In this document: positions 1,171-57,603 of the stretch, one piece after another
Layout of the letters: the number at the start of each line of letters is the position of its first letter
Position numbering within the stretch: position 1 is the first letter of the stretch
Source of the DNA: Octopus sinensis
Taxonomy: Eukaryota
Reading direction: 5' to 3'
Assembly: GCF_006345805.1 (NCBI RefSeq)
Contig: NC_043018.1
Span: 9,114,001-9,178,000, forward strand
Length of the DNA stretch: 64,000 nt
Position numbers and translations under genes: made by a program
The notes under the pieces: model-generated
The model's input: only the letters and a program-made list of their open reading frames with translations
What the model was told of the DNA's origin: nothing
Databases searched by the model: none

Positions 1171-2710
1171 ATATATGTATATATGATGGTACATATATAT
1201 GTATGTATATAGATACATACATCAATGTATATTTCCACAGATGCCACAAAAGCAAATAGACACAATCATTTTTGAAAGTGGTTCTGTAGTAAGATGCTTG
1301 CTTCCCAACCACATGGTTCCAAGTTCAGTCTCACTGCACGGCACTTTGGCCAAGTGTCTTCTTCTATAGCATAGATGGAAACTGAAAGAATCCCATCATA
1401 TATGTGTGTGTGTGTGTGTGTGTATTTATGTGTGTGTCTCTGTGTCTGTATTTGTCCCCACTCCATCGCTTGACAACCGATGTTGGTGTGTTTGCCTCTC
1501 TGTAACTTAGCAGTTTGGCAAAAGAGACCAATAGAATAAGTACCAGGCATACAAAGAATAAGCTCTGGGCTCAATTTCTTCAGTTAAAAGGCAGTTAAAT
1601 GCCTGAAAGAAGTAAAAGAATAAGAGAGTAAAAGAACATGTCTATCACCATCATTTTATAGCCATTTTGCAAAGAAGCAGGAGTTCCTAGAGGGGCCATC
1701 ACAATCCAAGACATTTCTTATTGCCAACCAACCTATGTCATTTGGCTTGATCTCTATGGCTTTTCTGAGTGTACTGGGTGTCTTTATTGTGGCACCTGGA
1801 CAAGAGGTGCTGCCTTGTTCACCCATCACTTTAGAGGGTGTGCAAAGGGTGATCGCTCCAGCTAAAGGAGATAGGGTGCTTTGAACATGGGGGTGTGGAG
1901 GGCTCTTCTCTGTGATGCCAGCACAAGGGCGGAGGGTGCTTTCTACATGGTATATGTAGAGAGTATTCAGTTACTTAAGATGAGTATTTTAACTCAGGTG
2001 ACCCAAGAAGGGAAGAAAAGGATAAAGAAATGAGAGTAGAAAGGCCAGAAATGGGGGGAGGTTGATAAAAGCAAGAGAGTAAGTGTAGAGTGTACTTAAT
2101 GATCTAAGTTGTGTGCTTTCGCTCAGATGACCAAGGAGGGGAATAGAAGAGTGATAATGACAGTAGAAAGGCCAGAATGGGTGGATGAAAGTAAGAGTAA
2201 GGTTGGAAAAGAAGAGATATTGGGGTGGAAACAGGAGGGAAGTGATAAGTGGACAAAGGTAAGTGTAGGTGATGGGTAACAACAGAAGTACCACAGAGGG
2301 GAGAGTGAGTGATGACTGGCAGAACAGAAAATTTGCCGTTAGAGTGTACTGGGCACAGACAGTTGAATGCAGTCTGCTATACACAGACTTAGTAAAGGAG
2401 TCAGAGTGATGAAGATTCTACTGTCAACACAGATAGTGGTGGGAGATGAGAGATGGGTGAACGAGGAGGATGGGAAGAATGAGAAATGGGTAGAGAAGAG
2501 ACTGGATGCAGCAAATATAAGCTGGGCAGGATACAAAATATCCCAACTTCTACTCACCACCCTTGTTTCATACCCATACGTATATACATATATGTATACA
2601 TATTTTGTGTGTAAGCATCATCATCATCATCATTTTATACCTACATTTCAATTGTGGCATTGGATAGACAATTTCTGTTCTAGCACCTTTGATTGTTATG
2701 GTGTGAGCAA

Positions 2711-3585
2711 GTGTGTGGGTGTGTTGTTGTTTGTGCCTTCTCGAGCCATGCCTGGCTCATAGGGCCAGTTTCCCAGTTTCCTTGGAGTATAGGTCCCCCA
2801 CCTTGATGGGACGACGGTCTGCCGCAGGTGAGCTGCAAGATGCAGGAGGAAAGAGTGAGAGAAAGTTGTGGCGAAAGAGTCAGCAGAAGTTTCGCCATTA
2901 CCTTCTGCCGGAGCCGCATGGAGCTTAGGTGTTACGCTCATAAACACACACATCGCCTGGTCTGAGATTCGAACCCTCGATTCCTCGACCATGAGTCCAC
3001 TGCTCTAGCCACTAGGCCATGTGCCTCCACAAAATAAATGCACCCTTTTAAAGCCTAGCCAGGCTCACGGGCCTGGTTTCCATAGCATATGTGTTCCCCA
3101 GCTGGACGGGACGTCAGTCCATCGCAGCGTTACTCATTTTTGCCAGCTGAGTGGACTGGAGCAACGTGAAATGAAGTGTTTTGCTCAAGAACACAATGCA
3201 TCACCCGGTCCAGGAATCGAAACCACAACCTTACGATCATGAATTCAACACCCTAACCACTAAGCCACGTGCCTCCACTACGAATGTGATGTGTGTGTGC
3301 GGGAGGCATACACTTGCAGTTAACCCTTCAGTATTCTGATTACTCTGCCAGATGTAATGCTTATCATGCATTTTCTCAGATTCAAGATTTAAATGATGTG
3401 ATTGTTTATCGTTAGAATGACACTGTAGGGTAGGTGTGAGAGACCTGATTTGGTCAGTTTAAACATAAAACAGGTAGACTACTTGGGCTTCTAATGGCTG
3501 ATTTGACTACTAAAGGGTTAAAATATGTATGCATGAATTATAATTGTCTACATAGCTGTGTGTGCTTATGTGTATATGTGTGTGT
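2711..3585 (+). repeat. Copy 1 of ~870-bp near-identical local duplication (copy 2 at 8184-9058)
   Basis: Direct comparison at offset 5473 shows only about six substitutions across two SINEs, a TTAA-bounded MITE and the spacers. Confidence 0.9.
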
Positions 3586-6784: not shown

Positions 6785-7634
6785 CCCCTTGATGGATCAA
6801 TTATATTCTGACATGGCGTTTCATTTCAGAGCATATTTTTTTATTTCCTTTTTTAATTATATACACTGTGTTAATTACAAAGAAAAAGTTTTATATCTTG
6901 TTTCCTTTATTTTTTATTATAGAAATTAAAATGTACTTTTACTCATTTGGATTTAAACGAGTTAACTCAGACACTGAAAAAATACATATAACTTAACGAT
7001 CTTCCATTTTTTATAAGATGTTTTGCTTTTAAATCAAAGGAAAATTTTTAAAAAATGAGACAGTTTATTTAGAATGATAATTTTTAAAACAAGGAGTTAC
7101 ACACAAAGTTATCTTGCAGACATCACACATGTATCTGCTTTCTCTTTGAATCTTCTTTCCTTTAGCGTCTCTCTTCTCTGCGCATTTTGCACACTGTCTT
7201 GTAGGGTTCTTTTTCTTATCACTTGGTGGTATTCCCATGGGAATGTGACCAGCTGGAGCAAAGCTTGTTGGATGTGGGATCGATGATGATCTTCCTGGTT
7301 TCGTGGAAGGCAATAAGGGCCTATATTTTTCAATAATCTTGGTGATTATTTGCATTCTAAATATCAGCAGTTTCACAGGAGAAGCTGAAGTTTCCAAAGA
7401 TGCTTTATACAAAACATAAGCATTCGAGATAGCCAAATCCATCAAATGAAAAAATACTTATTTTTTTTAAACAACACAAGTAAATTTGTGATTGCTCAAA
7501 AATGAAATGACACAAAACAAATAAACTCGTTTGAGTGCTAAAATTAAAATTTAATTTTGACTGAGTATACTCGTCTGGTTCTAAAAAGATACATTTGCAA
7601 TGCACGAGTAAACTCGGGATAATCCATTAAGGGG
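6785..7634 (-). mobile_element. Internally deleted piggyBac (PGBD4-like) DNA transposon, 850 bp
   Basis: TTAA at 6781-6784 and 7635-7638; TIRs CCCCTTGATGGATCA and CCCCTTAATGGATTA (13/15 match); retains the transposase C-terminus. Confidence 0.9.
7065..7445 (-). pseudogene. piggyBac transposase C-terminal fragment with Cys-rich domain
   Basis: (VFFHL)MDLAISNAYVLYK...RQCAKC...SRYMCDVCKITLCVTPCFKNYH matches the end of the piggyBac DDD domain plus the CRD. Confidence 0.9.
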
Positions 7635-8183
7635 TTAATGCTCTTTACCTAGAGATGCGATATAGTGGAGCATTCCAAATCCATGACAAAGTGAGTTCTG
7701 TTTCTATTTAGAACTAATCACCATCATCATCATTTAGTGTCTGTTGTCCATGCTGGCATGGGTTGGCAAGCTGGAAGGCTGCACCAAGCTCTGGTCTGTT
7801 TTGGCATGGTTTCTATGGCTGGATGCCCTTCCTAATGCCAACCACTCCAAGAGTGTAATGGGTGCTTTTATGTGCCACCAGCATGGTTACCATTTGCGTG
7901 ACACTGGTATCTGCCACGACTGCAATTTTACTTGGCTTGATGGGTCTTCTCAAGCATGACATGATGCCAAAGGTCTTCGTCATTGCCTCTGTGAGACCCA
8001 ACACTTGAAAGGTACTTTTTACATGCATGGGTGCCAGTTATGTGACACCCACGTGATTTCACTTGGCTTGATGGCTCTTCTCAAGCACAGCATATCTTCA
8101 AAGGTCTCATTCAGTAGTCACTGCCTCTGTGAGGTCCAAAGTTCGAAGATCATGCTTCACCATGTCGTCCCATGTCTTCCTGA

Positions 8184-9058
8184 GTGTGTGGGTGTGTTGT
8201 TGTTTGTTCCTTCTCGAGCCATGCCTGGCTCATAGGGCCAGTTTCCCAGTTTCCTTGGAGTATAGGTCCCCCACCTTGATGGGACGCCGGTCTGCCGCAG
8301 GTGAGCTGCAAGATGCAGGAGGAAAGAGTGAGAGAAAGTTGTGGCGAAAGAGTCAGCAGAAGTTTCGCCATTACCTTCTGCCGGAGCCGCGTGGAGCTTA
8401 GGTGTTACGCTCATAAACACACACATCGCCTGGTCTGAGATTCGAACCCTCGATTCCTCGACCGTGAGTCCACTGCTCTAGCCACTAGGCCATGTGCCTC
8501 CACAAAATAAATGCACCCTTTTAAAGCCTAGCCAGGCTCACGGGCCTGGTTTCCATAGCGTATGTGTTCCCCAGCTGGACGGGACGTCAGTCCATCGCAG
8601 CGTTACTCATTTTTGCCAGCTGAGTGGACTGGAGCAACGTGAAATGAAGTGTTTTGCTCAAGAACACAATGCATCACCCGGTCCAGGAATCGAAACCACA
8701 ACCTTACGATCATGAATTCAACACCCTAACCACTAAGCCACGTGCCTCCACTACGAATGTGATGTGTGTGTGCGGGAGGCATACACTTGCAGTTAACCCT
8801 TCAGTATTCTGATTACTCTGCCAGATGTAATGCTTATCATGCATTTTCTCAGATTCAAGATTTAAATGATGTGATTGTTTATCGTTAGAATGACACTGTA
8901 GGGTAGGTGTGAGAGACCTGATTTGGTCAGTTTAAACATAAAACAGGTAGACTACTTGGGCTTCTAATGGCTGATTTGACTACTAAAGGGTTAAAATATG
9001 TATGCATGAATTATAATTGTCTACATAGCTGTGTGTGTTTATGTGTATATGTGTGTGT
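8184..9058 (+). repeat. Copy 2 of ~870-bp local duplication
   Basis: See 2711-3585. Confidence 0.9.
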
Positions 9059-12014: not shown

Positions 12015-12620
12015 CATCATCATCGTTTAACATCCGCTTTCCATGCTAGCATGGATTGGACGATTTTGACTGAGGGCTGGCAAACCAGATGGCTGCACCA
12101 GGCTCCAATCTTGATTTGGCAGAGTTTCTATAGCTGGATGCCCTTCCTAACGCCAACCACTCCAAGAGTGTAGTGGGTGCTTTTTACATGCCACCGGCAC
12201 GGGGGCCAGTCAGGCGGTACTGGCAACGACCTCGCTCAAATCCTTTTACACATGCCAGCAGCACAGGTGCCAGTAAGGCAACTTTGGTAACGATCATGCT
12301 TGAATGATGCCCTTTTATGTGCCACTGGCACGGAAGCCAGTTAGCTGCTCTGGCAACGATCATGCTCGGATGGTGCTCTTGGCACCCTACTAGCACGGGC
12401 ACAAGTGCCAGTTTGGCGATGCTGGTAACGATCACGCTCGAATGGTGCCCTTTAAGTGCCACTGGCACGGAAGCCTGTTGGCTGCTCTGGCAACGATCAC
12501 GCTCGAATGGTGCCCTTTAAGTGCCACTGGCACAGAAGCCGGTTAGCTGCTCTGTCGATATCATGCTCATATGGTGCTCTTTGCACCCTGCCCATGGACG
12601 CCAGTCATTGAATTTGATTT
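12015..12620 (-). mobile_element. RTE 3'-UTR-derived repeat with (GAT)n tail and internal ~60-bp tandem repeats
   Basis: Same sequence family as the tail following RTE coding sequence at 51290-52035. Other copies at ~7725-8160, 10085-10340, 18200-18620, 21095-21325, 21960-22365, 31340-31605, 32675-32880 and 34170-34485. Confidence 0.7.
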
Positions 12621-51289: not shown

Positions 51290-52035
51290 TAAGAGGTAGA
51301 CCAGGAAAACTGGGATGAGGTGGTGAAGCACGACCTTCGAACGTTAGGTCTCACCATGGAAATGACTAGAGACCGAGACCTATGGAAGTATGCTTGTGCG
51401 TGAGAAGAACCCGGCAAGACTAGTGAAGCCATAACCCATGGCCACTACCTGGGACGTAGTCAGTCCACCGTGCATACTTCCTGCTTGTGATACTTGTGAA
51501 GACCTGTTGAGGCAAGTGAAAGTCAAGTCAAATCGAATCAAATCAAATAGATGAACATCAATGGAATTTGTACCTTGTGGTACCAGTGCCGGTTGGCACA
51601 TAAGAAAACCATCCGAACGGGACCGTAGCCAGTGACCGCATCGACTGGCCCCATGCTGTGGGCACGTAAAACACCATCCGATCGTAGCCGTTCGCCAGCC
51701 TCGTCTGGCACCTGTGTCGGGTGGCACATAAAAACCACCATCCGAGCGTGGCCGTCTGCCAGCCTTGTCTGGCACCTGTGTCTGGTGGCACATAAAAACA
51801 CCATTCGAGCGTGACCGTCTCTGCCAGCCTCGTCTGGCACCTGTGTCGGTGGCACATAAAATCACCCACTACACTCTCGGAGTGGTTGGCGTTAGGAAGG
51901 GCATCAATCTGTAGAAACACTGCCAGATCTGACTGGCCTGGTGCAGCCTTCAGGCTTGCCAGACCCCAGTTGAACCGTCCAACCCATGCTAGCATGGAAA
52001 GGGGACGTTAAACGATGATGATGATGATGATGATA
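51290..52035 (+). mobile_element. RTE LINE 3' end: ORF tail plus 3' UTR with internal tandem repeats and (GAT)n tail
   Basis: RGRPGKTWDEVVKHDLRTLGLTMEMTRDRDLWKYA followed by the common repeat ending GACGTTAAACGATGATGATG. Confidence 0.8.
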
Positions 52036-52757: not shown

Positions 52758-53722
52758 TCCTGCAATGGATTGCCACCCCATCCAGTGGGAATATATTCAC
52801 CACAAGACCTGGAAAACAGGATCTTTACTCTTTTTATCCGGGTATATATAATATGTAACTATGTATCTATGTATATGCGTTATTTGCATGTGTGTATGTA
52901 TGTATGTATGTATGTATGTATGTATGTATGTATGTATGTATGTATGTATTGTATGTATATATATATATATATATTTAGCAATAAGGACAAACTACTTAAT
53001 AAGGAAAACTTAACAAGAAATTGTCAGGTAGATAGCGTTAAAACCTCATAAGAGAAAAAATTTCGAAAAAATAATTATTTCTTATTGAACATATTAATTA
53101 TATATAGGAGGGCATATACATACATGCCAGGGGCATTCTACATACACGCCATACGCTAAGAGGGACAATCAGTCATTTCTACCAAAAATATTACTAATCC
53201 ACCGAATGCAATTTTTCAAAGAAAGACATTTAAAAAATATATAGACCTGTATCACAGTGATTTTCATACTTACGTAATCATCAGCAGGCCTGAATATACT
53301 ATAAATAAACAACGACCTGCTTCGCTTAAGCCGATCAGCTAACTGATCAACATCAACGAAGCACATGGGTGGGTTTATATATACTATATCCGGATGAATG
53401 GCAAACTTTACGAATTGCTTAGAGGCTTTTCGGAGTTGTTTAAGGAAAAAGTTTTATAAAATGTAGCATTAAGGACAATACTTATAGGAAAACTTAAAAG
53501 AAATTGTCAGGGAGATAGCGTAAAAACCTCATAAGAGAAAAATTTCGAAAATAATTATTTCTTATTGAACATATTAATTTATATATAGAGGGCATTATAA
53601 TACATGCCAGGAGGCATTCTAATACACGCCATACGCTAAGAGGGACATCAGTCATTTCTACCAAAAATATTACTAATCCCACCGAATGCATTTTTTCAAA
53701 GAAAAGACACTTAAAAAATATA

Positions 53723-53768
53723 GACCTGTATCACAGTGATTTCATACTTACGTAATCATCAGCAGGCC
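53723..53768 (-). ncRNA. Type I hammerhead ribozyme motif, consensus copy
   Basis: Reverse complement is GGCCTG CTGATGA TTACGTAAGTAT GAAA TCAC T GTGA TA CAGGTC. Confidence 0.8.
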
Positions 53769-54199
53769 TGAATATACTATAAATAAACAACGAGACCCTG
53801 CTCGCTTAAGCCGATCAGCTATGATCAACATCAACGAAGCACATGGGTGGGTTTATATATACTATATCCGGATGAATGGCAAACTTTTACGAATTGCATT
53901 TCGGGAGAGGAAAAGTTTTTTCGGAATAAAAATTTAGCAATTAAGGACAACTACTAATAAGGAAAACTTAACAAGAAATTGTCAGGTAGATAGCGTAAAA
54001 ACCTCATAAGAGAAAAAATTTCGAAAAAATAATTATTTCTATGAACATATTAATTTATATATAGAGGGCATTATACAGACATGCAGGAGGCATTCTACAT
54101 ACACGCCATACGCTAAGAGGGACAATCAGTCATATCTACCAAAAATATTACTAATCCCACCGATGCAATTTTTCAAAGAAAGACATTTAAAAATATATA

Positions 54200-54245
54200 G
54201 ACCTGTATCACAGTGATTTCATACTTACATAATCATCAGCAGGCC
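54200..54245 (-). ncRNA. Type I hammerhead ribozyme motif, stem II C-G changed to U.G wobble
   Basis: Same motif with TTATGTAAGTAT in stem II; core intact. Confidence 0.75.
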
Positions 54246-55294
54246 TGAATATACTATAAATAACAAACGACCTGCTTCGCTTAAGCCGATCAGCTAACTG
54301 ATCACATCAACGAAGCACATGGGTGGGTTTATATATACTATATCCGGATGAATGGCAAACTTTTACGAATTGCATTTCGGGAGAGGAAAAGTTTTTCGGA
54401 ATAAAATTTAGCAATTAAGGACAACTACTTAATAAGGAAAACTTAACAAGAAATTGTCAGGTAGATAGCGTAAAAACCTCATAAGAGAAAAATTTCGAAA
54501 ATAATTATTCTTATTGAACATATTAATTTATATATAGAGGGCATATACATACATGCCAGGAGGCATTCTACATACAATTTAGCAATTAAGGACAACTACT
54601 AATAAGGAAAACTTAACAAGAAATTGTCAGGTAGATAGCGTAAAAACCTCATAAGAGAAAAAAATTCGGAAAATAATTATTTCTTATTGAACAATTTAAT
54701 TTATATATAGAGGGCATTATACATACATGCCAGGAGGATTCTACATACACGCCATACGCTAAGAGGGACAATCAGTCATTTCTACCAAAATATTACTAAT
54801 CCACCCGAATGCAATTTTCAAAGAAAGACATTTAAAAATATATAGACCTGTATCACAGTGATTCATACTTACGTAATCATCAGCAGGCCTGAATATACTA
54901 TAAATAAAAACGACCCTGCTTCGCTTAAGCCGATCAGCTAACTGATCAACATCAACGAAGCACATGGGTGGGTTTATATATACTATATCGGGGAATGGCA
55001 AACTTTACGAATTGCATTCGGGAGAGGAAAAGTTTTTCGGAATTAAAATTTAGCAATTAAGGACAACTACTTAATAAGGAAAACTTAACAAGAAATTGTC
55101 AGGTAGATAGCGTAAAAACCTCATAAGAGAAAAATTCGAAAATAATTATTTCTTATTGAACTATTAATTTTATATATAGAGGGCATTATACATACATGCC
55201 AGGAGGCATTCTACATACATGTGCTTCGTTGATGTTGATCAGTTAGCTGATCGGCTTAAGCGAAGCAGGGTCGTTGTTTATTATAGTATATTCA

Positions 55295-55340
55295 GGCCTG
55301 CTGATGATTACGTAAGTATGAAATCACTGTGATACAGGTC
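55295..55340 (+). ncRNA. Type I hammerhead ribozyme motif, consensus copy; predicted AUA^C cleavage between 55334 and 55335
   Basis: GGCCTG CTGATGA TTACGTAAGTAT GAAA TCAC T GTGA TA CAGGTC. Variant copies at 53244-53290, 54845-54889, 55779-55829, 56290-56346, 56825-56872 and 57317-57360. Confidence 0.8.
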
Positions 55341-57603
55341 TATATATATTTTAAAATGTCTTTCTTTGAAAAATTGCATTCGGTGGGATTAGTAATATTT
55401 TGGTAGAAATGACTGATTGTCCCTCTTAGCGTATGGCGTGTATGTAGAATGCCTCCTGGCATGTATGTATAATGCCCTCTATATATAAATTAATATGTTC
55501 AATAAGAAATAATTATTTCGAAATTTTTTCTCTTATGAGGTTTTACGCTATCTACCTGACAATTTCTTGTTAAGTTCCTTATTAAGTAGTTGTCCTTAAT
55601 TGCTAAATTTTTATTCCGAAAAAACTTTTCCTCTCCCGAAATGCAATTCGTAAAAGTTTGCCATTCATCCGGATATAGTATATATATATAAACCCACCCC
55701 CCTGTGCTTCGTTGATGTTGATCAGTTAGAGCTGATCGGCTTAAGCGAAGCAGGGTCGTTGTTATTTATATATATTCAGGCCTGCTGATGATTACGTAAG
55801 TATGAAATGAAATCACTGTGATACAGGTCTATATATTTTTAAATGTCTTTTCTTTGAAAAATGGCATTCTGGGGATTAGATTAGTAATCATTTTTGGTAT
55901 AGAAAATGATTGTGTCCCTCTTAGCGTATGGCGTGTGTATGTGTAGAATGCCTCCTGGCATGTATGTATAATGCCCTTATATATATAAATTAATATGTTC
56001 AATAAGAAATTATTTTCGAAATTTTTTCTCTTATGAGGTTTTTACGCTATCTACCTGACAATTTCTTGTTAAGTTTTCCTTATTAAGTAGTTGTCCTTAA
56101 TTGCTAAATTTTATTCCGAAAAAACTTTTCCTCTCCCGAAATGCAATTCGTAAAAGTTTGCCATTCATCCGGATATAGTATATATAAACCCACCCATGTG
56201 CTTCGTTGATGTTGATCAGTTAGCTGATCGGCAGTTGAAGCAGGATCGGTTAGTGAGCAGGGGTCGTTGTTTATTTTATAGTATATTCAGGCTGCTGATT
56301 GATGATGTAAGTTAAGATGAAAGTATGAATCACTGTGATACAGGGCTATATATTTTTAAAGTTTTCTTTGAAAAATGCTTTCGTGTGTATAGTAATATAG
56401 AAAATGCATTCGGTGGTGTAGAATATTTGATTGTGTAAATGATCGATTGTCCTCTCGTATGCGTATGTGATAGAATGCCTCCTGGCATGTATGTATAATG
56501 CCTCTCTCTATATAAATTACTAATGTTCATGTTCATAAGAAATAATTATTTTCGAAAATTTTTTCTCTTAGAGTGTTTTTTTTACGCTATCTACCTGACA
56601 ATTTCTTGTTAAGTTTTCCTTATTAAGTAGTGTGTCCTTAATTGCTAAATTTTTATTCCGAAAAAACTTTTCCTCTCCCGAAATGCAACAATATCTAAAA
56701 GTAAAGTTTGCCATTCATCTCCGGATATAGTATATATAAACCCACCCAGGTGCTTCGTTGATGTTGATCAGTTAGCTGATCGGCTTAAGCGAAGCAGGGT
56801 CGTTGTTTATTTATAGTATATTCAGGCCTGCTGATATGATTACGTAAGTATGAAATCACTGTGATACAGGTCTATATATTTTTAAATGTCTTTCTTTGAA
56901 AAATGCATTCTGGTGGGGATTAGTAATATTTTTTTTGGAATAGAAATGACTGATTGTCCCTCTTAGCGTATGGCGGGTGTATGTAGAATGCCTCCTGGCA
57001 TGTATGTATAATGCCCTCTATAATAAATTAATATGTTCAATAAGAAATAATTATTTTCGAAATTTTTTCTCTTATGAGGTTTTTACGCTATCTACCTGAC
57101 AATTTCTTGTTAAGTTTTCCTTATTAAGTAGTTGTCCTTAATTGCTAAATTTTTATTCCGAAAAAACTTTTCCTCTCCCGAAATGCAATTCGTAAAAGTT
57201 TGCCATTCATCCGGATATAGTATATATAAAACCCACCCATGTGCTTCGTTGATGTTGATCAGTTAGCTGATCGGCTTTAAGCGAAGCAGGGTCGTTGTTT
57301 ATTTATAGTATATTCAGGCCTCTGATGATTACGTAAGTATGAAACACTGTGATACAGGTTATATATTTTTTAAATGTCTTTCTTTGAAAAATTGCATTCG
57401 GTGGATTAGTAATATTTTTGGAGAAAGAAATGACTGATTGTCTCTTTAGCGTATGGGCGTGTATGTAGAATGCCTCCTGGCATGTATGTATAATTGCCCT
57501 CTATATATAAATATATATAATATATATATATATATATACCGCATGTGTACCGTTGGCGATTGTTTTTCCTCCGTCTTTCCTTCTTTGGATCTTTATTTTT
57601 CCT

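What the first reader, a model, noticed from the sequence alone, without database searches (positions are those of the whole stretch)
52975..57500. Tandem ~480-bp array with one type I hammerhead ribozyme per unit: a putative cephalopod retrozyme / self-cleaving satellite
Seen: each full unit contains GGCCTG-CTGATGA-TTAC GTAA GTAT-GAAA-TCAC T GTGA-TA-CAGGTC. This gives the complete CUGAUGA/GAAA/UH core; stem I GGCCUG/CAGGUC, extendable past a UUCA bulge by GUAUA/UAUAU; stem II UAC/GUA capped by a GUAA GNRA loop; and stem III AUCAC/GUGAU with a 1-nt loop. There are nine motifs (53244, 53723, 54200, 54845 on minus; 55295, 55779, 56290, 56825, 57317 on plus): two match the consensus, one has a wobble, and six have small indels or decay. 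The unit has further hairpins (GATCAG-TTAG-CTGATC inside GCTTCG...CGAAGC; ATGCC-TCCT-GGCAT) and no ORF. Established: hammerhead-containing tandem repeats (newt satellite 2, schistosome Sm-alpha, cave-cricket pDo500, metazoan non-LTR retrozymes) are transcribed as multimers, self-cleave into monomers that can circularise, often need dimeric folding when stem III has a tiny loop, and are thought to be mobilised by Penelope-like elements. Inference: this array yields ~475-490-nt linear or circular RNAs cut at AUA^C. Caveat: positions 10.1/11.1 are U.U rather than the usual G-C. I do not know whether this family has already been described.
Basis: partly seen in the sequence, partly recalled or inferred. 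Interest (0 to 1): 0.92.

Follow-up and report, generated by a model that had tools for sequence, protein, structure and literature searches.

The report
Hammerhead-ribozyme tandem repeat (animal retrozyme)
A 4.5-kb block of ~480-bp non-coding repeats, each carrying a hammerhead self-cleaving RNA motif, looks like a new family of the already known animal "retrozyme" repeats, and the way its blocks are joined hints at how such repeats are pasted into the genome.

Summary
Window 52973-57518 is a ~480-bp repeat array. It has 4.7 unit-equivalents on the minus strand and 4.6 on the plus strand, meeting head-to-head at 55218/55219. Three are intact: 53722-53770 (-), 54199-54247 (-, one G.U wobble) and 55293-55341 (+). 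Six carry 1-14-nt indels that resemble long-read assembly noise.

The motif has the full type I core, a 7-bp helix I, a 3-bp helix II closed by GUAA with a U.U at 10.1/11.1, and an 11-nt near-palindromic helix III.

Against it, no Rfam hammerhead model matches, even at E<=10 on 101 nt. No other copy could be reached, so conservation, cleavage and expression remain untested. The octopus origin could not be verified.

Best reading: a non-LTR retrozyme, that is, a type I hammerhead satellite. It is a new member of a known kind.

Beyond the finding:
- The array lies in a (TA)n microsatellite.
- It consists of three blocks with recurrent ends (5'-TGTATGTAG...GCTAAAT-3').
- These ends do not coincide with the ribozyme cut site.
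- This pattern fits Penelope-like-element integration.

The parts
52852..52974 (.). Left flank: (TATG)n followed by (TA)n microsatellite abutting the array
   Evidence: TRF rows 52852-52974; sequence
52973..54576 (-). Block Y. In ribozyme sense it reads B-C-A-B-C-A-B-C-A-B (~1.6 kb). Its sense 5' end is TGTATGTAG at 54576. Its sense 3' end is TTGCTAAAT at 52973, against the (TA)n flank.
   Evidence: blastn segments, alignment, junction printout
54577..55219 (-). Block X. In sense it reads B-C-A-B (643 nt). It has the same 5' end (TGTATGTAG, at 55219) and the same 3' end (TTGCTAAAT, at 54577) as block Y.
55218..57518 (+). Block Z: 4.6 regular units (A-B-C repeated). Its 5' end lies inside the unit (CATGTGCTTCG) and is joined head-to-head to block X through a 2-nt CA overlap. 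Its 3' end, ...CTCTATATATAAAT, runs into (TA)n.
57502..57538 (.). Right flank: (TA)n microsatellite
   Evidence: TRF, sequence
55293..55341 (+). Intact type I hammerhead. Core CUGAUGA at 55301-55307; U10.1 at 55308; U11.1 at 55319; GAA at 55320-55322; A15.1 at 55323; U16.1 at 55333; A17 at 55334. Predicted cleavage is between 55334 and 55335.
   Evidence: descriptor hit, coordinates, folds
53722..53770 (-). Intact type I hammerhead, identical to the consensus. Predicted cleavage is between 53729 and 53728 on the minus strand.
54199..54247 (-). Intact type I hammerhead with C>U in helix II (C-G becomes U.G). Predicted cleavage is between 54206 and 54205 on the minus strand.
53243..53292 (-). 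Hammerhead copy with one extra A in the GAAA tract
54844..54891 (-). Hammerhead copy lacking one A of GAAA
55777..55830 (+). Hammerhead copy with a 5-nt GAAAT duplication. It still passes the relaxed descriptor in a shifted register.
56288..56347 (+). Scrambled hammerhead copy inside the very noisy unit p3 (56195-56746), which has 88 inserted bases relative to the consensus
56823..56873 (+). Hammerhead copy with TA inserted inside CUGAUGA
57315..57361 (+). Hammerhead copy with 1-nt deletions in helix I, in helix III and after the cleavage site

Best explanation
The locus is an insertion of a non-autonomous, non-coding retroelement of the metazoan non-LTR retrozyme kind. This kind is also described as type I hammerhead satellite DNA. 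The unit is ~480 bp.

**Shown.**
- Each unit carries one type I hammerhead.
- The array is AT-rich and has no ORF.
- It sits in a (TA)n microsatellite as two head-to-head arms.

**Inferred mechanism.**
- The array, or its source copies, is transcribed into multimeric RNA.
- The hammerhead cuts after A17 of GUGAUA^CAGGUC. It acts either as a monomer, with a 4-bp helix III and a 3-nt loop, or more efficiently as a double hammerhead. In the double form the near-palindrome AUCAC-U-GUGAU of two copies pairs into a 10-bp extended helix III.

**Inferred integration.**
- It was carried out by a Penelope-like element reverse transcriptase/endonuclease.
- Both strands of a cut (TA)n target were extended, which gives the inverted arms with 3' ends pointing outward.
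- Reverse transcription started at a fixed internal site (...GCUAAAU) on templates with a fixed 5' end (UGUAUGUAG...).
- A template switch produced the internal B|B junction.
- On this reading the RNA that was copied was not the ribozyme-cut monomer.
For: **Motif.**
- All invariant core positions and the type I topology are present in three copies. Helix I is 7 bp, followed by an internal loop and a distal 6-bp extension. Helix II has four positions closed by GUAA.
- This equals the 'helix I 6 bp, helix II 4 bp' canonical metazoan architecture (PMC4209133).

**Chance.** 0.07 expected against 6 observed. None of 500 simulated windows gave a hit of this quality.

**Folding.**
- Two hammerhead domains cofold into the double hammerhead with extended helix III as the MFE: -37.1 kcal/mol against 2 x -14.7.
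- In a 1.1-kb multimer, the monomeric or dimeric active folds lie about 2 kcal/mol per ribozyme above the MFE.
- The circular monomer folds at -120.6 kcal/mol against -89.4 +/- 5.8 for shuffles, z = -5.4. Retrozyme circles are described as highly self-paired.

**Context.**
- GC is 31-34%.
- There is no ORF above 56 aa.
- Two consecutive complete hammerheads (53722, 54199) meet the 'active retrozyme' criterion of Li et al. 2026.

**Precedents.** U.U at the base of helix II in active axolotl HHR_Amex2. AUA cleavage triplet.

**Integration.**
- (TA)n lies on both sides.
- PLEs show 'complex tandem/inverted insertions' and a (TA)n microsatellite bias (PMC8557442).
- A purified PLE protein cleaves and extends both DNA strands and starts reverse transcription at fixed internal sites of the RNA (PMC11167929).
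- The end GCTAAAT is used twice and TGTATGTAG twice. The third 3' end also terminates in TAAAT, a 5-mer that occurs only three times in the unit.
Against: - No Rfam hammerhead family matches at the gathering score, at E<=10 over 4.7 kb, or at E<=10 over 101 nt.
- G10.1-C11.1, the most conserved helix II pair, is replaced by U.U.
- The isolated domain's MFE is a competing hairpin, with UGAU of the core paired to AUCA of helix III. The domain is not unusually stable (z = -1.5).
- Six of nine copies are broken.
- Difference rates inside and outside the motif do not clearly differ: 3.6% against 6.2% without unit p3, and 8.6% against 8.8% with it.
- Only one locus is available, so there is no evidence of selection on the core, of dispersal, of transcription or of cleavage.
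- The window contains no PLE reverse transcriptase or GIY-YIG ORF.
- The unit, at ~480 bp, is slightly longer than the published 150-450 bp range.
- The integration model rests on four junctions of a single locus in a visibly noisy assembly.
Confidence: 0.72

Rival explanations
1. This is an ordinary minisatellite or satellite whose unit happens to contain a hammerhead-like string. The string may have arisen by chance, or may be a dead relic of a ribozyme. On this reading the array grew by unequal crossing-over, and nothing is cleaved or circularised.
For: - Rfam hammerhead models are silent.
- There is a U.U at 10.1/11.1.
- A competing hairpin is the MFE.
- Six of nine copies are broken, and the motif is not clearly protected relative to the rest of the unit.
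- In a multi-gigabase genome the relaxed descriptor would hit by chance hundreds of times, by extrapolation from 9 hits in 32 Mb.
Against: - The motif is far better than the chance hits: helix I is 7 bp and helix III is 4-5 bp, and 0 of 500 simulated windows reached helix I >=6 with helix III >=4.
- Chance would also have to place it in exactly the genomic context typical of type I hammerheads, with the canonical 6/4 helix architecture.
- The near-palindromic helix III makes a double hammerhead the cofold MFE.
- Recurrent block ends and the head-to-head arrangement in (TA)n are not what unequal crossing-over produces.
Confidence: 0.15
2. The repeats are pseudo-LTR or UTR parts of an autonomous Penelope-like element, or a direct internal-deletion derivative of one, rather than an independent retrozyme family.
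For: - PLE pseudo-LTRs carry type I hammerheads and form tandem and inverted structures.
- Li et al. 2026 derive non-LTR retrozymes from PLE pseudo-LTRs.
- Blocks X and Y are flanked by direct copies of segment B, as in the pLTR-body-pLTR arrangement.
Against: - No reverse transcriptase or GIY-YIG ORF is present in the units or anywhere in the 64 kb.
- PLE hammerheads are usually minimal variants that lack helix III and have a longer helix II. Here helix III is long and helix II has the canonical length.
- The hammerhead lies outside the repeated terminal segment B.
Confidence: 0.08
3. The inverted arrangement, and possibly part of the array length, is an assembly artefact caused by a fold-back or chimeric long read. 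On this reading the real locus is a simple one-orientation tandem array.
For: - The copies differ mainly by indels and stutter-like insertions: unit p3 has 88 inserted bases, and TRF reports 12% indels in the plus arm.
- The assembly is scaffolded, with a 100-N gap at 60280-60379.
Against: - The arms are not mirror images. The minus arm contains the B|B junction and ends at GCTAAAT, whereas the plus arm is regular and ends inside B.
- The symmetric parts are separated by a 251-nt asymmetric stretch (pair I8).
- Each arm ends in a different flank, and both flanks are (TA)n.
Confidence: 0.05

Closest known systems
Metazoan non-LTR retrozymes (Cervera & de la Pena 2020, PMC7229834), e.g. those of the mussel Mytilus galloprovincialis, the coral Acropora millepora and the axolotl
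   Same: - AT-rich, non-coding tandem repeats with one type I hammerhead per unit.
- A highly self-paired predicted monomer.
- Copy numbers ranging from dimers to multimers.
- Proposed mobilisation by PLEs.
   Different: - The unit is ~480 bp, against the reported ~170-400 nt RNAs and 150-450 bp repeats.
- Helix III is an 11-nt near-palindrome, not a 1-2-bp stem with a small loop.
- Expression and circles are not shown here.
- There is no sequence similarity that could be tested.
Axolotl HHR_Amex2 / Rtz_353 retrozyme
   Same: Type I hammerhead with a U.U mismatch at the base of helix II. It cleaves weakly as a monomer (22% in 1 h) and efficiently in dimeric constructs.
   Different: Amex2 has a 2-bp helix III with a tetraloop and a 350-bp unit. 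Here helix III is 4-5 bp, palindromic, and the unit is 480 bp.
Newt satellite 2, Schistosoma Sm-alpha and cave-cricket pDo500 hammerhead satellites
   Same: Type I hammerhead in every unit of a transcribed tandem repeat. The double-hammerhead mechanism through an extended helix III is known from the newt element.
   Different: These have G10.1-C11.1 and are recognised by Rfam-type models. Sm-alpha is SINE-like and dispersed. None of them could be compared at the sequence level here; this resemblance is recalled and read from papers.
Penelope-like elements (pseudo-LTR hammerheads; PAc of Anolis, PMC11167929; Naiad and others, PMC8557442)
   Same: - Tandem plus inverted insertion structures.
- (TA)n target bias.
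- Fixed internal start of reverse transcription.
- Extension of both target strands.
- Hammerhead cleavage not required for insertion in vitro.
   Different: - PLEs encode reverse transcriptase plus GIY-YIG endonuclease. No such ORF is present here.
- PLE hammerheads are mostly minimal variants without helix III.
Plant LTR retrozymes
   Same: Non-autonomous retroelement with a hammerhead and a circRNA intermediate. Blocks X and Y are bounded by direct repeats of segment B.
   Different: - Plant elements carry type III hammerheads inside ~350-bp LTRs, a tRNA-Met PBS, a PPT, 4-bp TSDs and GC above 55%.
- Here the hammerhead is type I, lies outside segment B, and GC is ~33%.

Membership tests
Hammerhead ribozyme, type I | Invariant core C3 U4 G5 A6 N7 G8 A9 / G12 A13 A14 / A15.1-U16.1 / H17 (not G) | tested here: met
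   CUGAUGA ... GAAA ... U-A^C is present in the three intact copies. H17 is A.
Hammerhead ribozyme, type I | Three helices around the core, with helix I open and helices II and III closed by loops | tested here: met
   Descriptor hits show helix I of 7 bp, helix II of 3 bp plus a U.U with a GUAA loop, and helix III of 4 bp with a 3-nt loop. The order of elements gives type I.
Hammerhead ribozyme, type I | G10.1-C11.1 pair closing helix II at the core | tested here: not met
   All copies have U10.1 and U11.1. With this pair required, the descriptor finds 0 hits. A precedent for U.U exists in active HHR_Amex2.
Hammerhead ribozyme, type I | Match to the curated covariance models (Rfam hammerhead families) | tested here: not met
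   There is no hammerhead hit at the gathering score, at E<=10 on 52900-57600, or at E<=10 on 55270-55370.
Hammerhead ribozyme, type I | Canonical metazoan architecture: helix I ~6 bp then an internal loop 1, helix II 4 bp with loop 2, and a tertiary loop-loop contact | tested here: inconclusive
   The lengths fit: 7 bp, an internal loop, a 6-bp distal stem, and four helix II positions with GUAA. The tertiary contact cannot be judged from sequence with these tools.
Hammerhead ribozyme, type I | Site-specific self-cleavage giving 2',3'-cyclic phosphate and 5'-OH ends | not testable with these tools
   This needs in vitro transcription or RNA end mapping.
Metazoan non-LTR retrozyme | [quoted passage not shown] | tested here: met
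   Nine units of ~476-500 bp each carry the motif. The unit is slightly above the published range.
Metazoan non-LTR retrozyme | [quoted passage not shown] 2026) | tested here: met
   The copies at 53722-53770 and 54199-54247 lie in adjacent units.
Metazoan non-LTR retrozyme | Low GC (below 45-50%), no coding capacity, no LTR/PBS/PPT | tested here: met
   GC is 0.31-0.34. The longest frame is 56 aa. PBS and PPT were not searched specifically.
Metazoan non-LTR retrozyme | Monomer RNA predicted to be highly self-paired | tested here: met
   The circular MFE is -120.6 kcal/mol, z = -5.4 against 200 dinucleotide shuffles.
Metazoan non-LTR retrozyme | Many dispersed genomic copies; expression as linear and circular monomers | not testable with these tools
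   There is only one locus in the window. No copies turned up in metagenome, viral or prokaryote collections, or through pseudo-ORFs. No eukaryote genome or RNA-seq resource was available.
Metazoan non-LTR retrozyme | Co-occurrence with hammerhead-bearing Penelope-like elements in the same genome | not testable with these tools
   The window has no PLE ORF. Octopus vulgaris is reported to have 30 recently active Penelope families, but the source organism is unverified.
Penelope-like element (autonomous) | Single ORF with reverse transcriptase and GIY-YIG endonuclease between pseudo-LTRs | tested here: not met
   There is no ORF above 56 aa in the unit. Inspection of all 167 stop-to-stop frames of at least 70 aa with sequence entropy above 3.6 bits showed none that looks like reverse transcriptase or endonuclease. 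Pfam was run on only seven selected frames.
Penelope-like element (insertion signature) | Tandem or partial-tandem plus inverted 5'-truncated copy; microsatellite (TA)n target; fixed internal reverse-transcription start | tested here: met
   The arms are head-to-head, (TA)n lies on both sides, and the 3' end GCTAAAT recurs, as described. This is a single locus, so it is suggestive only.
Viroid-like or deltavirus-like circular RNA replicon | Ribozymes in both polarities; RNA-only replication | tested here: not met
   The antisense strand shows no ribozyme, either with Rfam at E<=10 or with the hammerhead descriptor. The sequence is chromosomal DNA.

The most novel reading that the evidence does not exclude
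This single locus may be a fossil of how an animal retrozyme is pasted into DNA.

- Three cDNA blocks sit in one (TA)n target.
- Their 3' ends point outward from both target strands.
- Reverse transcription started at one fixed internal site (...GCUAAAU, and again at a ...UAAAU).
- The templates share a fixed 5' end (UGUAUGUAG) about 107 nt downstream of the hammerhead cut site.

If this holds across loci, it would show two things. First, retrozymes are mobilised by the Penelope-like-element machinery. Second, the template is a multimeric, uncleaved transcript, or a circle read from a fixed start. It is not the ribozyme-processed monomer, so the hammerhead would serve something other than template production.
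Probability: 0.3. Interest if true: 0.6.

Novelty: new member of a known kind. Interest (0 to 1): 0.42.

Why it matters
Type I hammerhead repeats are known from cnidarians to amphibians, so another family is not surprising in itself.

- **Taxon.** No paper in the searched library reports a hammerhead or retrozyme in a cephalopod. If the window is from an octopus, it adds a lineage with recently active Penelope elements.
- **Ribozyme variant.** The U.U at 10.1/11.1, the long palindromic helix III and the AUA site escape all Rfam models. Surveys based on covariance models would miss families like this one.
- **Mechanism.** The recurrent block ends, the inverted arms and the (TA)n target give a concrete prediction that can be checked genome-wide. 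[quoted passage not shown]

Tried and rejected
- **Rfam.** cmscan was run at three sensitivities and gave no hammerhead hit. The only hits were microsatellite-driven mir-297 and chance matches to Yfr11, mir-9236, mir-753 and snoZ7. All were rejected.
- **DNA scans for other copies.** Two patterns were searched in metagenome contigs, one in IMG/VR viral contigs and one in prokaryote genome contigs. All returned zero. These collections are not expected to hold animal DNA.
- **Protein search for other copies.** I concatenated the four longest frames of the unit and searched for spuriously called proteins from other copies. Nothing was found.
- **Identifying the organism.** An exact look-up of a 165-aa ORF found nothing. 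A homology search with the HEN1-like exon returned no candidates. Full-text searches for the hammerhead string and for a SINE string gave zero papers. The organism stays unverified.
- **Conservation within the array.** Comparing the hammerhead with the rest of the unit is uninformative. The copies are near-identical apart from indel noise.
- **Fold-back artefact.** This was considered for the inverted arms and rejected because the arms are not mirror images.
- **PLE ORF in the window.** None was found.
- **Script problems.** Two scripts timed out and one failed on the N run. They were redone.
- **Paper not held.** Lunse et al. 2017 (PMC5785218) could not be read.

Full report
**1. The observation**

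Tandem Repeats Finder reports a 476-478-bp period over 52973-54576 (91% matches). It reports a 500-bp period over 55218-57512 (83% matches, 12% indels). A blastn of one unit (56747-57237) against the window gives 11 collinear segments covering 52967-57518. Six are on the minus strand (52967-55219) and five on the plus strand (55218-57518). The unit occurs nowhere else in the 64 kb.

- Two are identical to the consensus (53722-53770 minus, 55293-55341 plus).
- One has a C>U change that turns a C-G pair of helix II into U.G (54199-54247 minus).
- Six carry indels of 1-14 nt.

The other details also hold. The additional hairpins are present. The longest stop-to-stop frame in a consensus trimer is 56 aa. 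The one correction is that the locus is not a single tandem array. It is two inverted arms.

**2. Is the motif more than chance?**

The simple pattern CTGATGA-N-GAAA-N-CAGG occurs 6 times, against 0.07 expected from shuffles.

I wrote a relaxed type I descriptor: helix I at least 4 bp, CUGANGA, helix II at least 3 bp with a 10.1/11.1 mismatch allowed, GAAA, helix III at least 2 bp with a loop of at least 3 nt, U, H, then the helix I 3' strand.
- It finds four copies, all in the sense orientation of the array, and nothing else in the window.
- In 500 simulated 64-kb sequences with the window's dinucleotide statistics it hit 9 times. It never hit with helix I >=6 bp and helix III >=4 bp, as observed here.

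The nine copies descend from one ancestral motif, so they count as one event. Chance would need about 1e-4 per 480-bp unit for the relaxed motif, and well below that for a motif of this quality. It would also have to land in the one genomic context where metazoan type I hammerheads normally live. I regard chance as unlikely but not excluded at the scale of a whole genome.

**3. Anatomy of the ribozyme candidate**

In the intact plus-strand copy:
- Helix I is AGGCCUG/CAGGUCU (7 bp, one G.U). It is followed by a small internal loop and a 6-bp distal A/U helix.
- The core CUGAUGA is at 55301-55307.
- Helix II is U.U (10.1/11.1), then U-A, A-U, C-G, closed by GUAA.
- G12-A13-A14 is at 55320-55322.
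- Helix III starts with A15.1-U16.1 inside the 11-nt near-palindrome AUCAC-U-GUGAU.
- H17 is A55334, and the predicted cut is 55334|55335.

The helix lengths match the description of canonical metazoan type I hammerheads. Those have helix I of 6 bp, helix II of 4 bp, and helix III short and palindromic (PMC4209133).

[quoted passage not shown] It cleaves 22% in one hour as a monomer and much better as a dimer (PMC7229834).
- AUA is a natural cleavage triplet in the ELVd (+) hammerhead.

**4. Folding**

- Alone, the 67-nt domain prefers a competing hairpin in which UGAU of the core pairs with AUCA of helix III (-14.7 kcal/mol). It is not unusually stable (z = -1.5).
- Two copies cofold into the double hammerhead, with a 10-bp extended helix III and a central U.U, as the minimum-energy structure. 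This is -37.1 kcal/mol against -29.4 for two separate hairpins.
- In a modelled 1.1-kb multimer, forcing two monomeric hammerheads costs 4.0 kcal/mol in total. Forcing the double hammerhead costs 4.3 kcal/mol. Both active folds are therefore accessible.
A 4-bp stem with a CUG loop is possible.
- The cut-to-cut monomer, folded as a circle, reaches -120.6 kcal/mol against -89.4 +/- 5.8 for shuffles (z = -5.4). This fits the 'stable and highly self-paired' retrozyme circles.

**5. Evidence against**

- No Rfam hammerhead family matches. This holds at the gathering score over the window, at E<=10 over the array, and at E<=10 over 101 nt around the best copy. I attribute this to the missing G10.1-C11.1 pair and the unusual helix III. 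It nevertheless remains a failed membership test by covariance model.
- Within the array the motif is not clearly better kept than the rest. Differences are 3.6% against 6.2% without unit p3, and 8.6% against 8.8% with it.
- The differences are mostly single-base indels and stutter-like insertions; unit p3 has 88 inserted bases. With a 100-N gap nearby, this suggests a scaffolded long-read assembly of modest consensus quality. The 'decay' of six copies may therefore be largely technical.

**6. Architecture of the locus (new relative to the finding)**

Read in ribozyme sense, the unit has three segments:
- A runs from CATGTGCTTCG to GTATGGCG, is ~225 nt, and contains the hammerhead.
- B runs from TGTATGTAG to TTGCTAAAT and is ~170 nt.
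- C runs from TTTTATTCC to CCCACC and is ~90 nt.

The blocks are laid out as follows:
- The minus arm consists of two blocks. Block X (55219 down to 54577) reads B-C-A-B. Block Y (54576 down to 52973) reads B-C-A-B-C-A-B-C-A-B.
- Both blocks begin with TGTATGTAG and end with TTGCTAAAT. A B|B junction therefore sits at 54576/54577.
- The outer end of Y abuts (TA)n.
- The plus arm, block Z, begins inside the unit at CATGTGCTTCG. It is joined to the 5' end of X through a 2-nt CA overlap at 55218-55219.
- Z runs for 4.6 regular units and ends at ...TATATAAAT against (TA)n.

So the three 5' ends face inward and the 3' ends face outward or head-to-tail. The end GCTAAAT is used twice. All three 3' ends finish in TAAAT, a 5-mer that occurs only three times per unit.

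Neither recurrent end is the hammerhead cut site. That site lies about 107 nt upstream of TGTATGTAG.

The arms are not mirror images. Their symmetric parts are separated by 251 nt (pair I8), and only the minus arm has the B|B junction. This argues against a fold-back read artefact.

**7. Mechanism**

The published model for non-LTR retrozymes is multimeric transcription, hammerhead self-cleavage, circularisation by a tRNA ligase, then reverse transcription and integration by an autonomous element. That element is probably a Penelope-like element, or PLE.

The architecture here fits the PLE part of this model well:
- PLE insertions are 'complex tandem/inverted', often with an inverted 5'-truncated copy, and they favour microsatellites such as (TA)n (PMC8557442).
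- A purified PLE protein cleaves and extends both target strands.
- The same protein starts reverse transcription at fixed internal sites of the RNA that are not homologous to the target. It does not need hammerhead cleavage (PMC11167929).

I therefore read blocks Y and Z as cDNAs primed from the two strands of a cut (TA)n. Block X would be the product of a template switch onto a second RNA at the same start site. The shared 5' end TGTATGTAG would be the 5' end of the template RNAs.

The steps that are shown are the sequence layout, the motif and the folds. Transcription, cleavage, circularisation and the integration pathway are all inferred.

**8. Surroundings and origin**

The window is clearly metazoan:
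- A HEN1/HENMT1-type methyltransferase exon at 31604-31840 matches solved Hen1 structures at E = 1.5e-13.
- There are piggyBac-type and Tc1/mariner-type relics.
- There are SINE-like repeats with 61-65-bp internal tandems, and very long microsatellites.

No reverse transcriptase or GIY-YIG ORF is present.

If the source is an octopus, recently active Penelope families are on record there (PMC13282606). No paper in the library links hammerheads or retrozymes with cephalopods beyond a PLE survey. The hammerhead string itself occurs in no paper.

**9. Comparison and verdict**

It works like a non-LTR retrozyme, or hammerhead satellite. By the features I could test, it is one:
- type I hammerhead in each unit
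- tandem and non-coding
- AT-rich
- two adjacent complete ribozymes
- highly structured monomer

The failures are the G10.1-C11.1 pair and the Rfam models. The untestable features are cleavage, expression, dispersal and the PLE partner.

It is not an autonomous PLE, because it has no ORF. It is not a plant LTR retrozyme, because the hammerhead is type I and there is no PBS or PPT context. It is not a viroid-like replicon, because there is no antisense ribozyme.

Novelty: new member of a known kind. I give 0.72 confidence that it is a genuine retrozyme-type element. I give roughly even odds that the intact copies cleave efficiently. I give about 0.3 that the junction pattern reflects a general PLE-type integration rule.

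Interest is moderate. The family itself is ordinary. Two aspects are worth a genome-wide follow-up: the variant escapes Rfam, and the locus gives a testable handle on retrozyme mobilisation.

Noticed in passing
window 31604-31840 (+); possibly also 20059-20409 and 35311-35600 (+): An exon-like frame matches the methyltransferase domain of Hen1 / small RNA 2'-O-methyltransferase (HENMT1) structures (E = 1.5e-13). Two further frames may be exons of the same gene but had no Pfam hit. The array lies about 17 kb downstream.
   Followed up: partly
window 25440-30203: A 4.8-kb (TTA)n microsatellite of ~1600 copies with 85% matches. GC is 3-4% over 26-30 kb.
   Followed up: no
window 12285-12582, 18359-18549, 34163-34323, 51661-51866: A high-copy SINE-like repeat with an internal 61-65-bp tandem sub-repeat (GGCAC.TAAAA.CACCATC...). 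It occurs in both orientations. Full-text searches for its strings found no paper.
   Followed up: partly
window 57818-58066: A palindromic MITE-like element with 96-nt arms that are 98% complementary and a 57-nt spacer. It is embedded in TA repeats 300 bp right of the array (pair I14).
   Followed up: no
window 7068-7457 (-) and 61179-61424 (+): Transposase relics: a piggyBac-type zf-Tnp_2 zinc finger (E = 3e-8) and a DDE_3 (Tc1/mariner-like) C-terminal fragment that scores below Pfam's cut-off.
   Followed up: partly
window 60280-60379: A run of 100 N, which is a scaffold gap. It shows that the source is a scaffolded assembly.
   Followed up: no
window 56195-56746 (unit p3) and about 53400-53460 (unit m2): Unit p3 carries 88 inserted bases of stutter-like duplications. 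Unit m2 has a locally rearranged segment C. The first looks like poor long-read consensus and the second like a real variant.
   Followed up: partly
window 2683-3458 and 8153-8931: Two near-identical copies of a repeat that give identical frame translations. This is probably a young interspersed element or a segmental duplicate.
   Followed up: no
window 52904-52973: The Rfam mir-297 match (41.9 bits, gathering score 90) is only the (TATG)n microsatellite, not a miRNA.
   Followed up: yes
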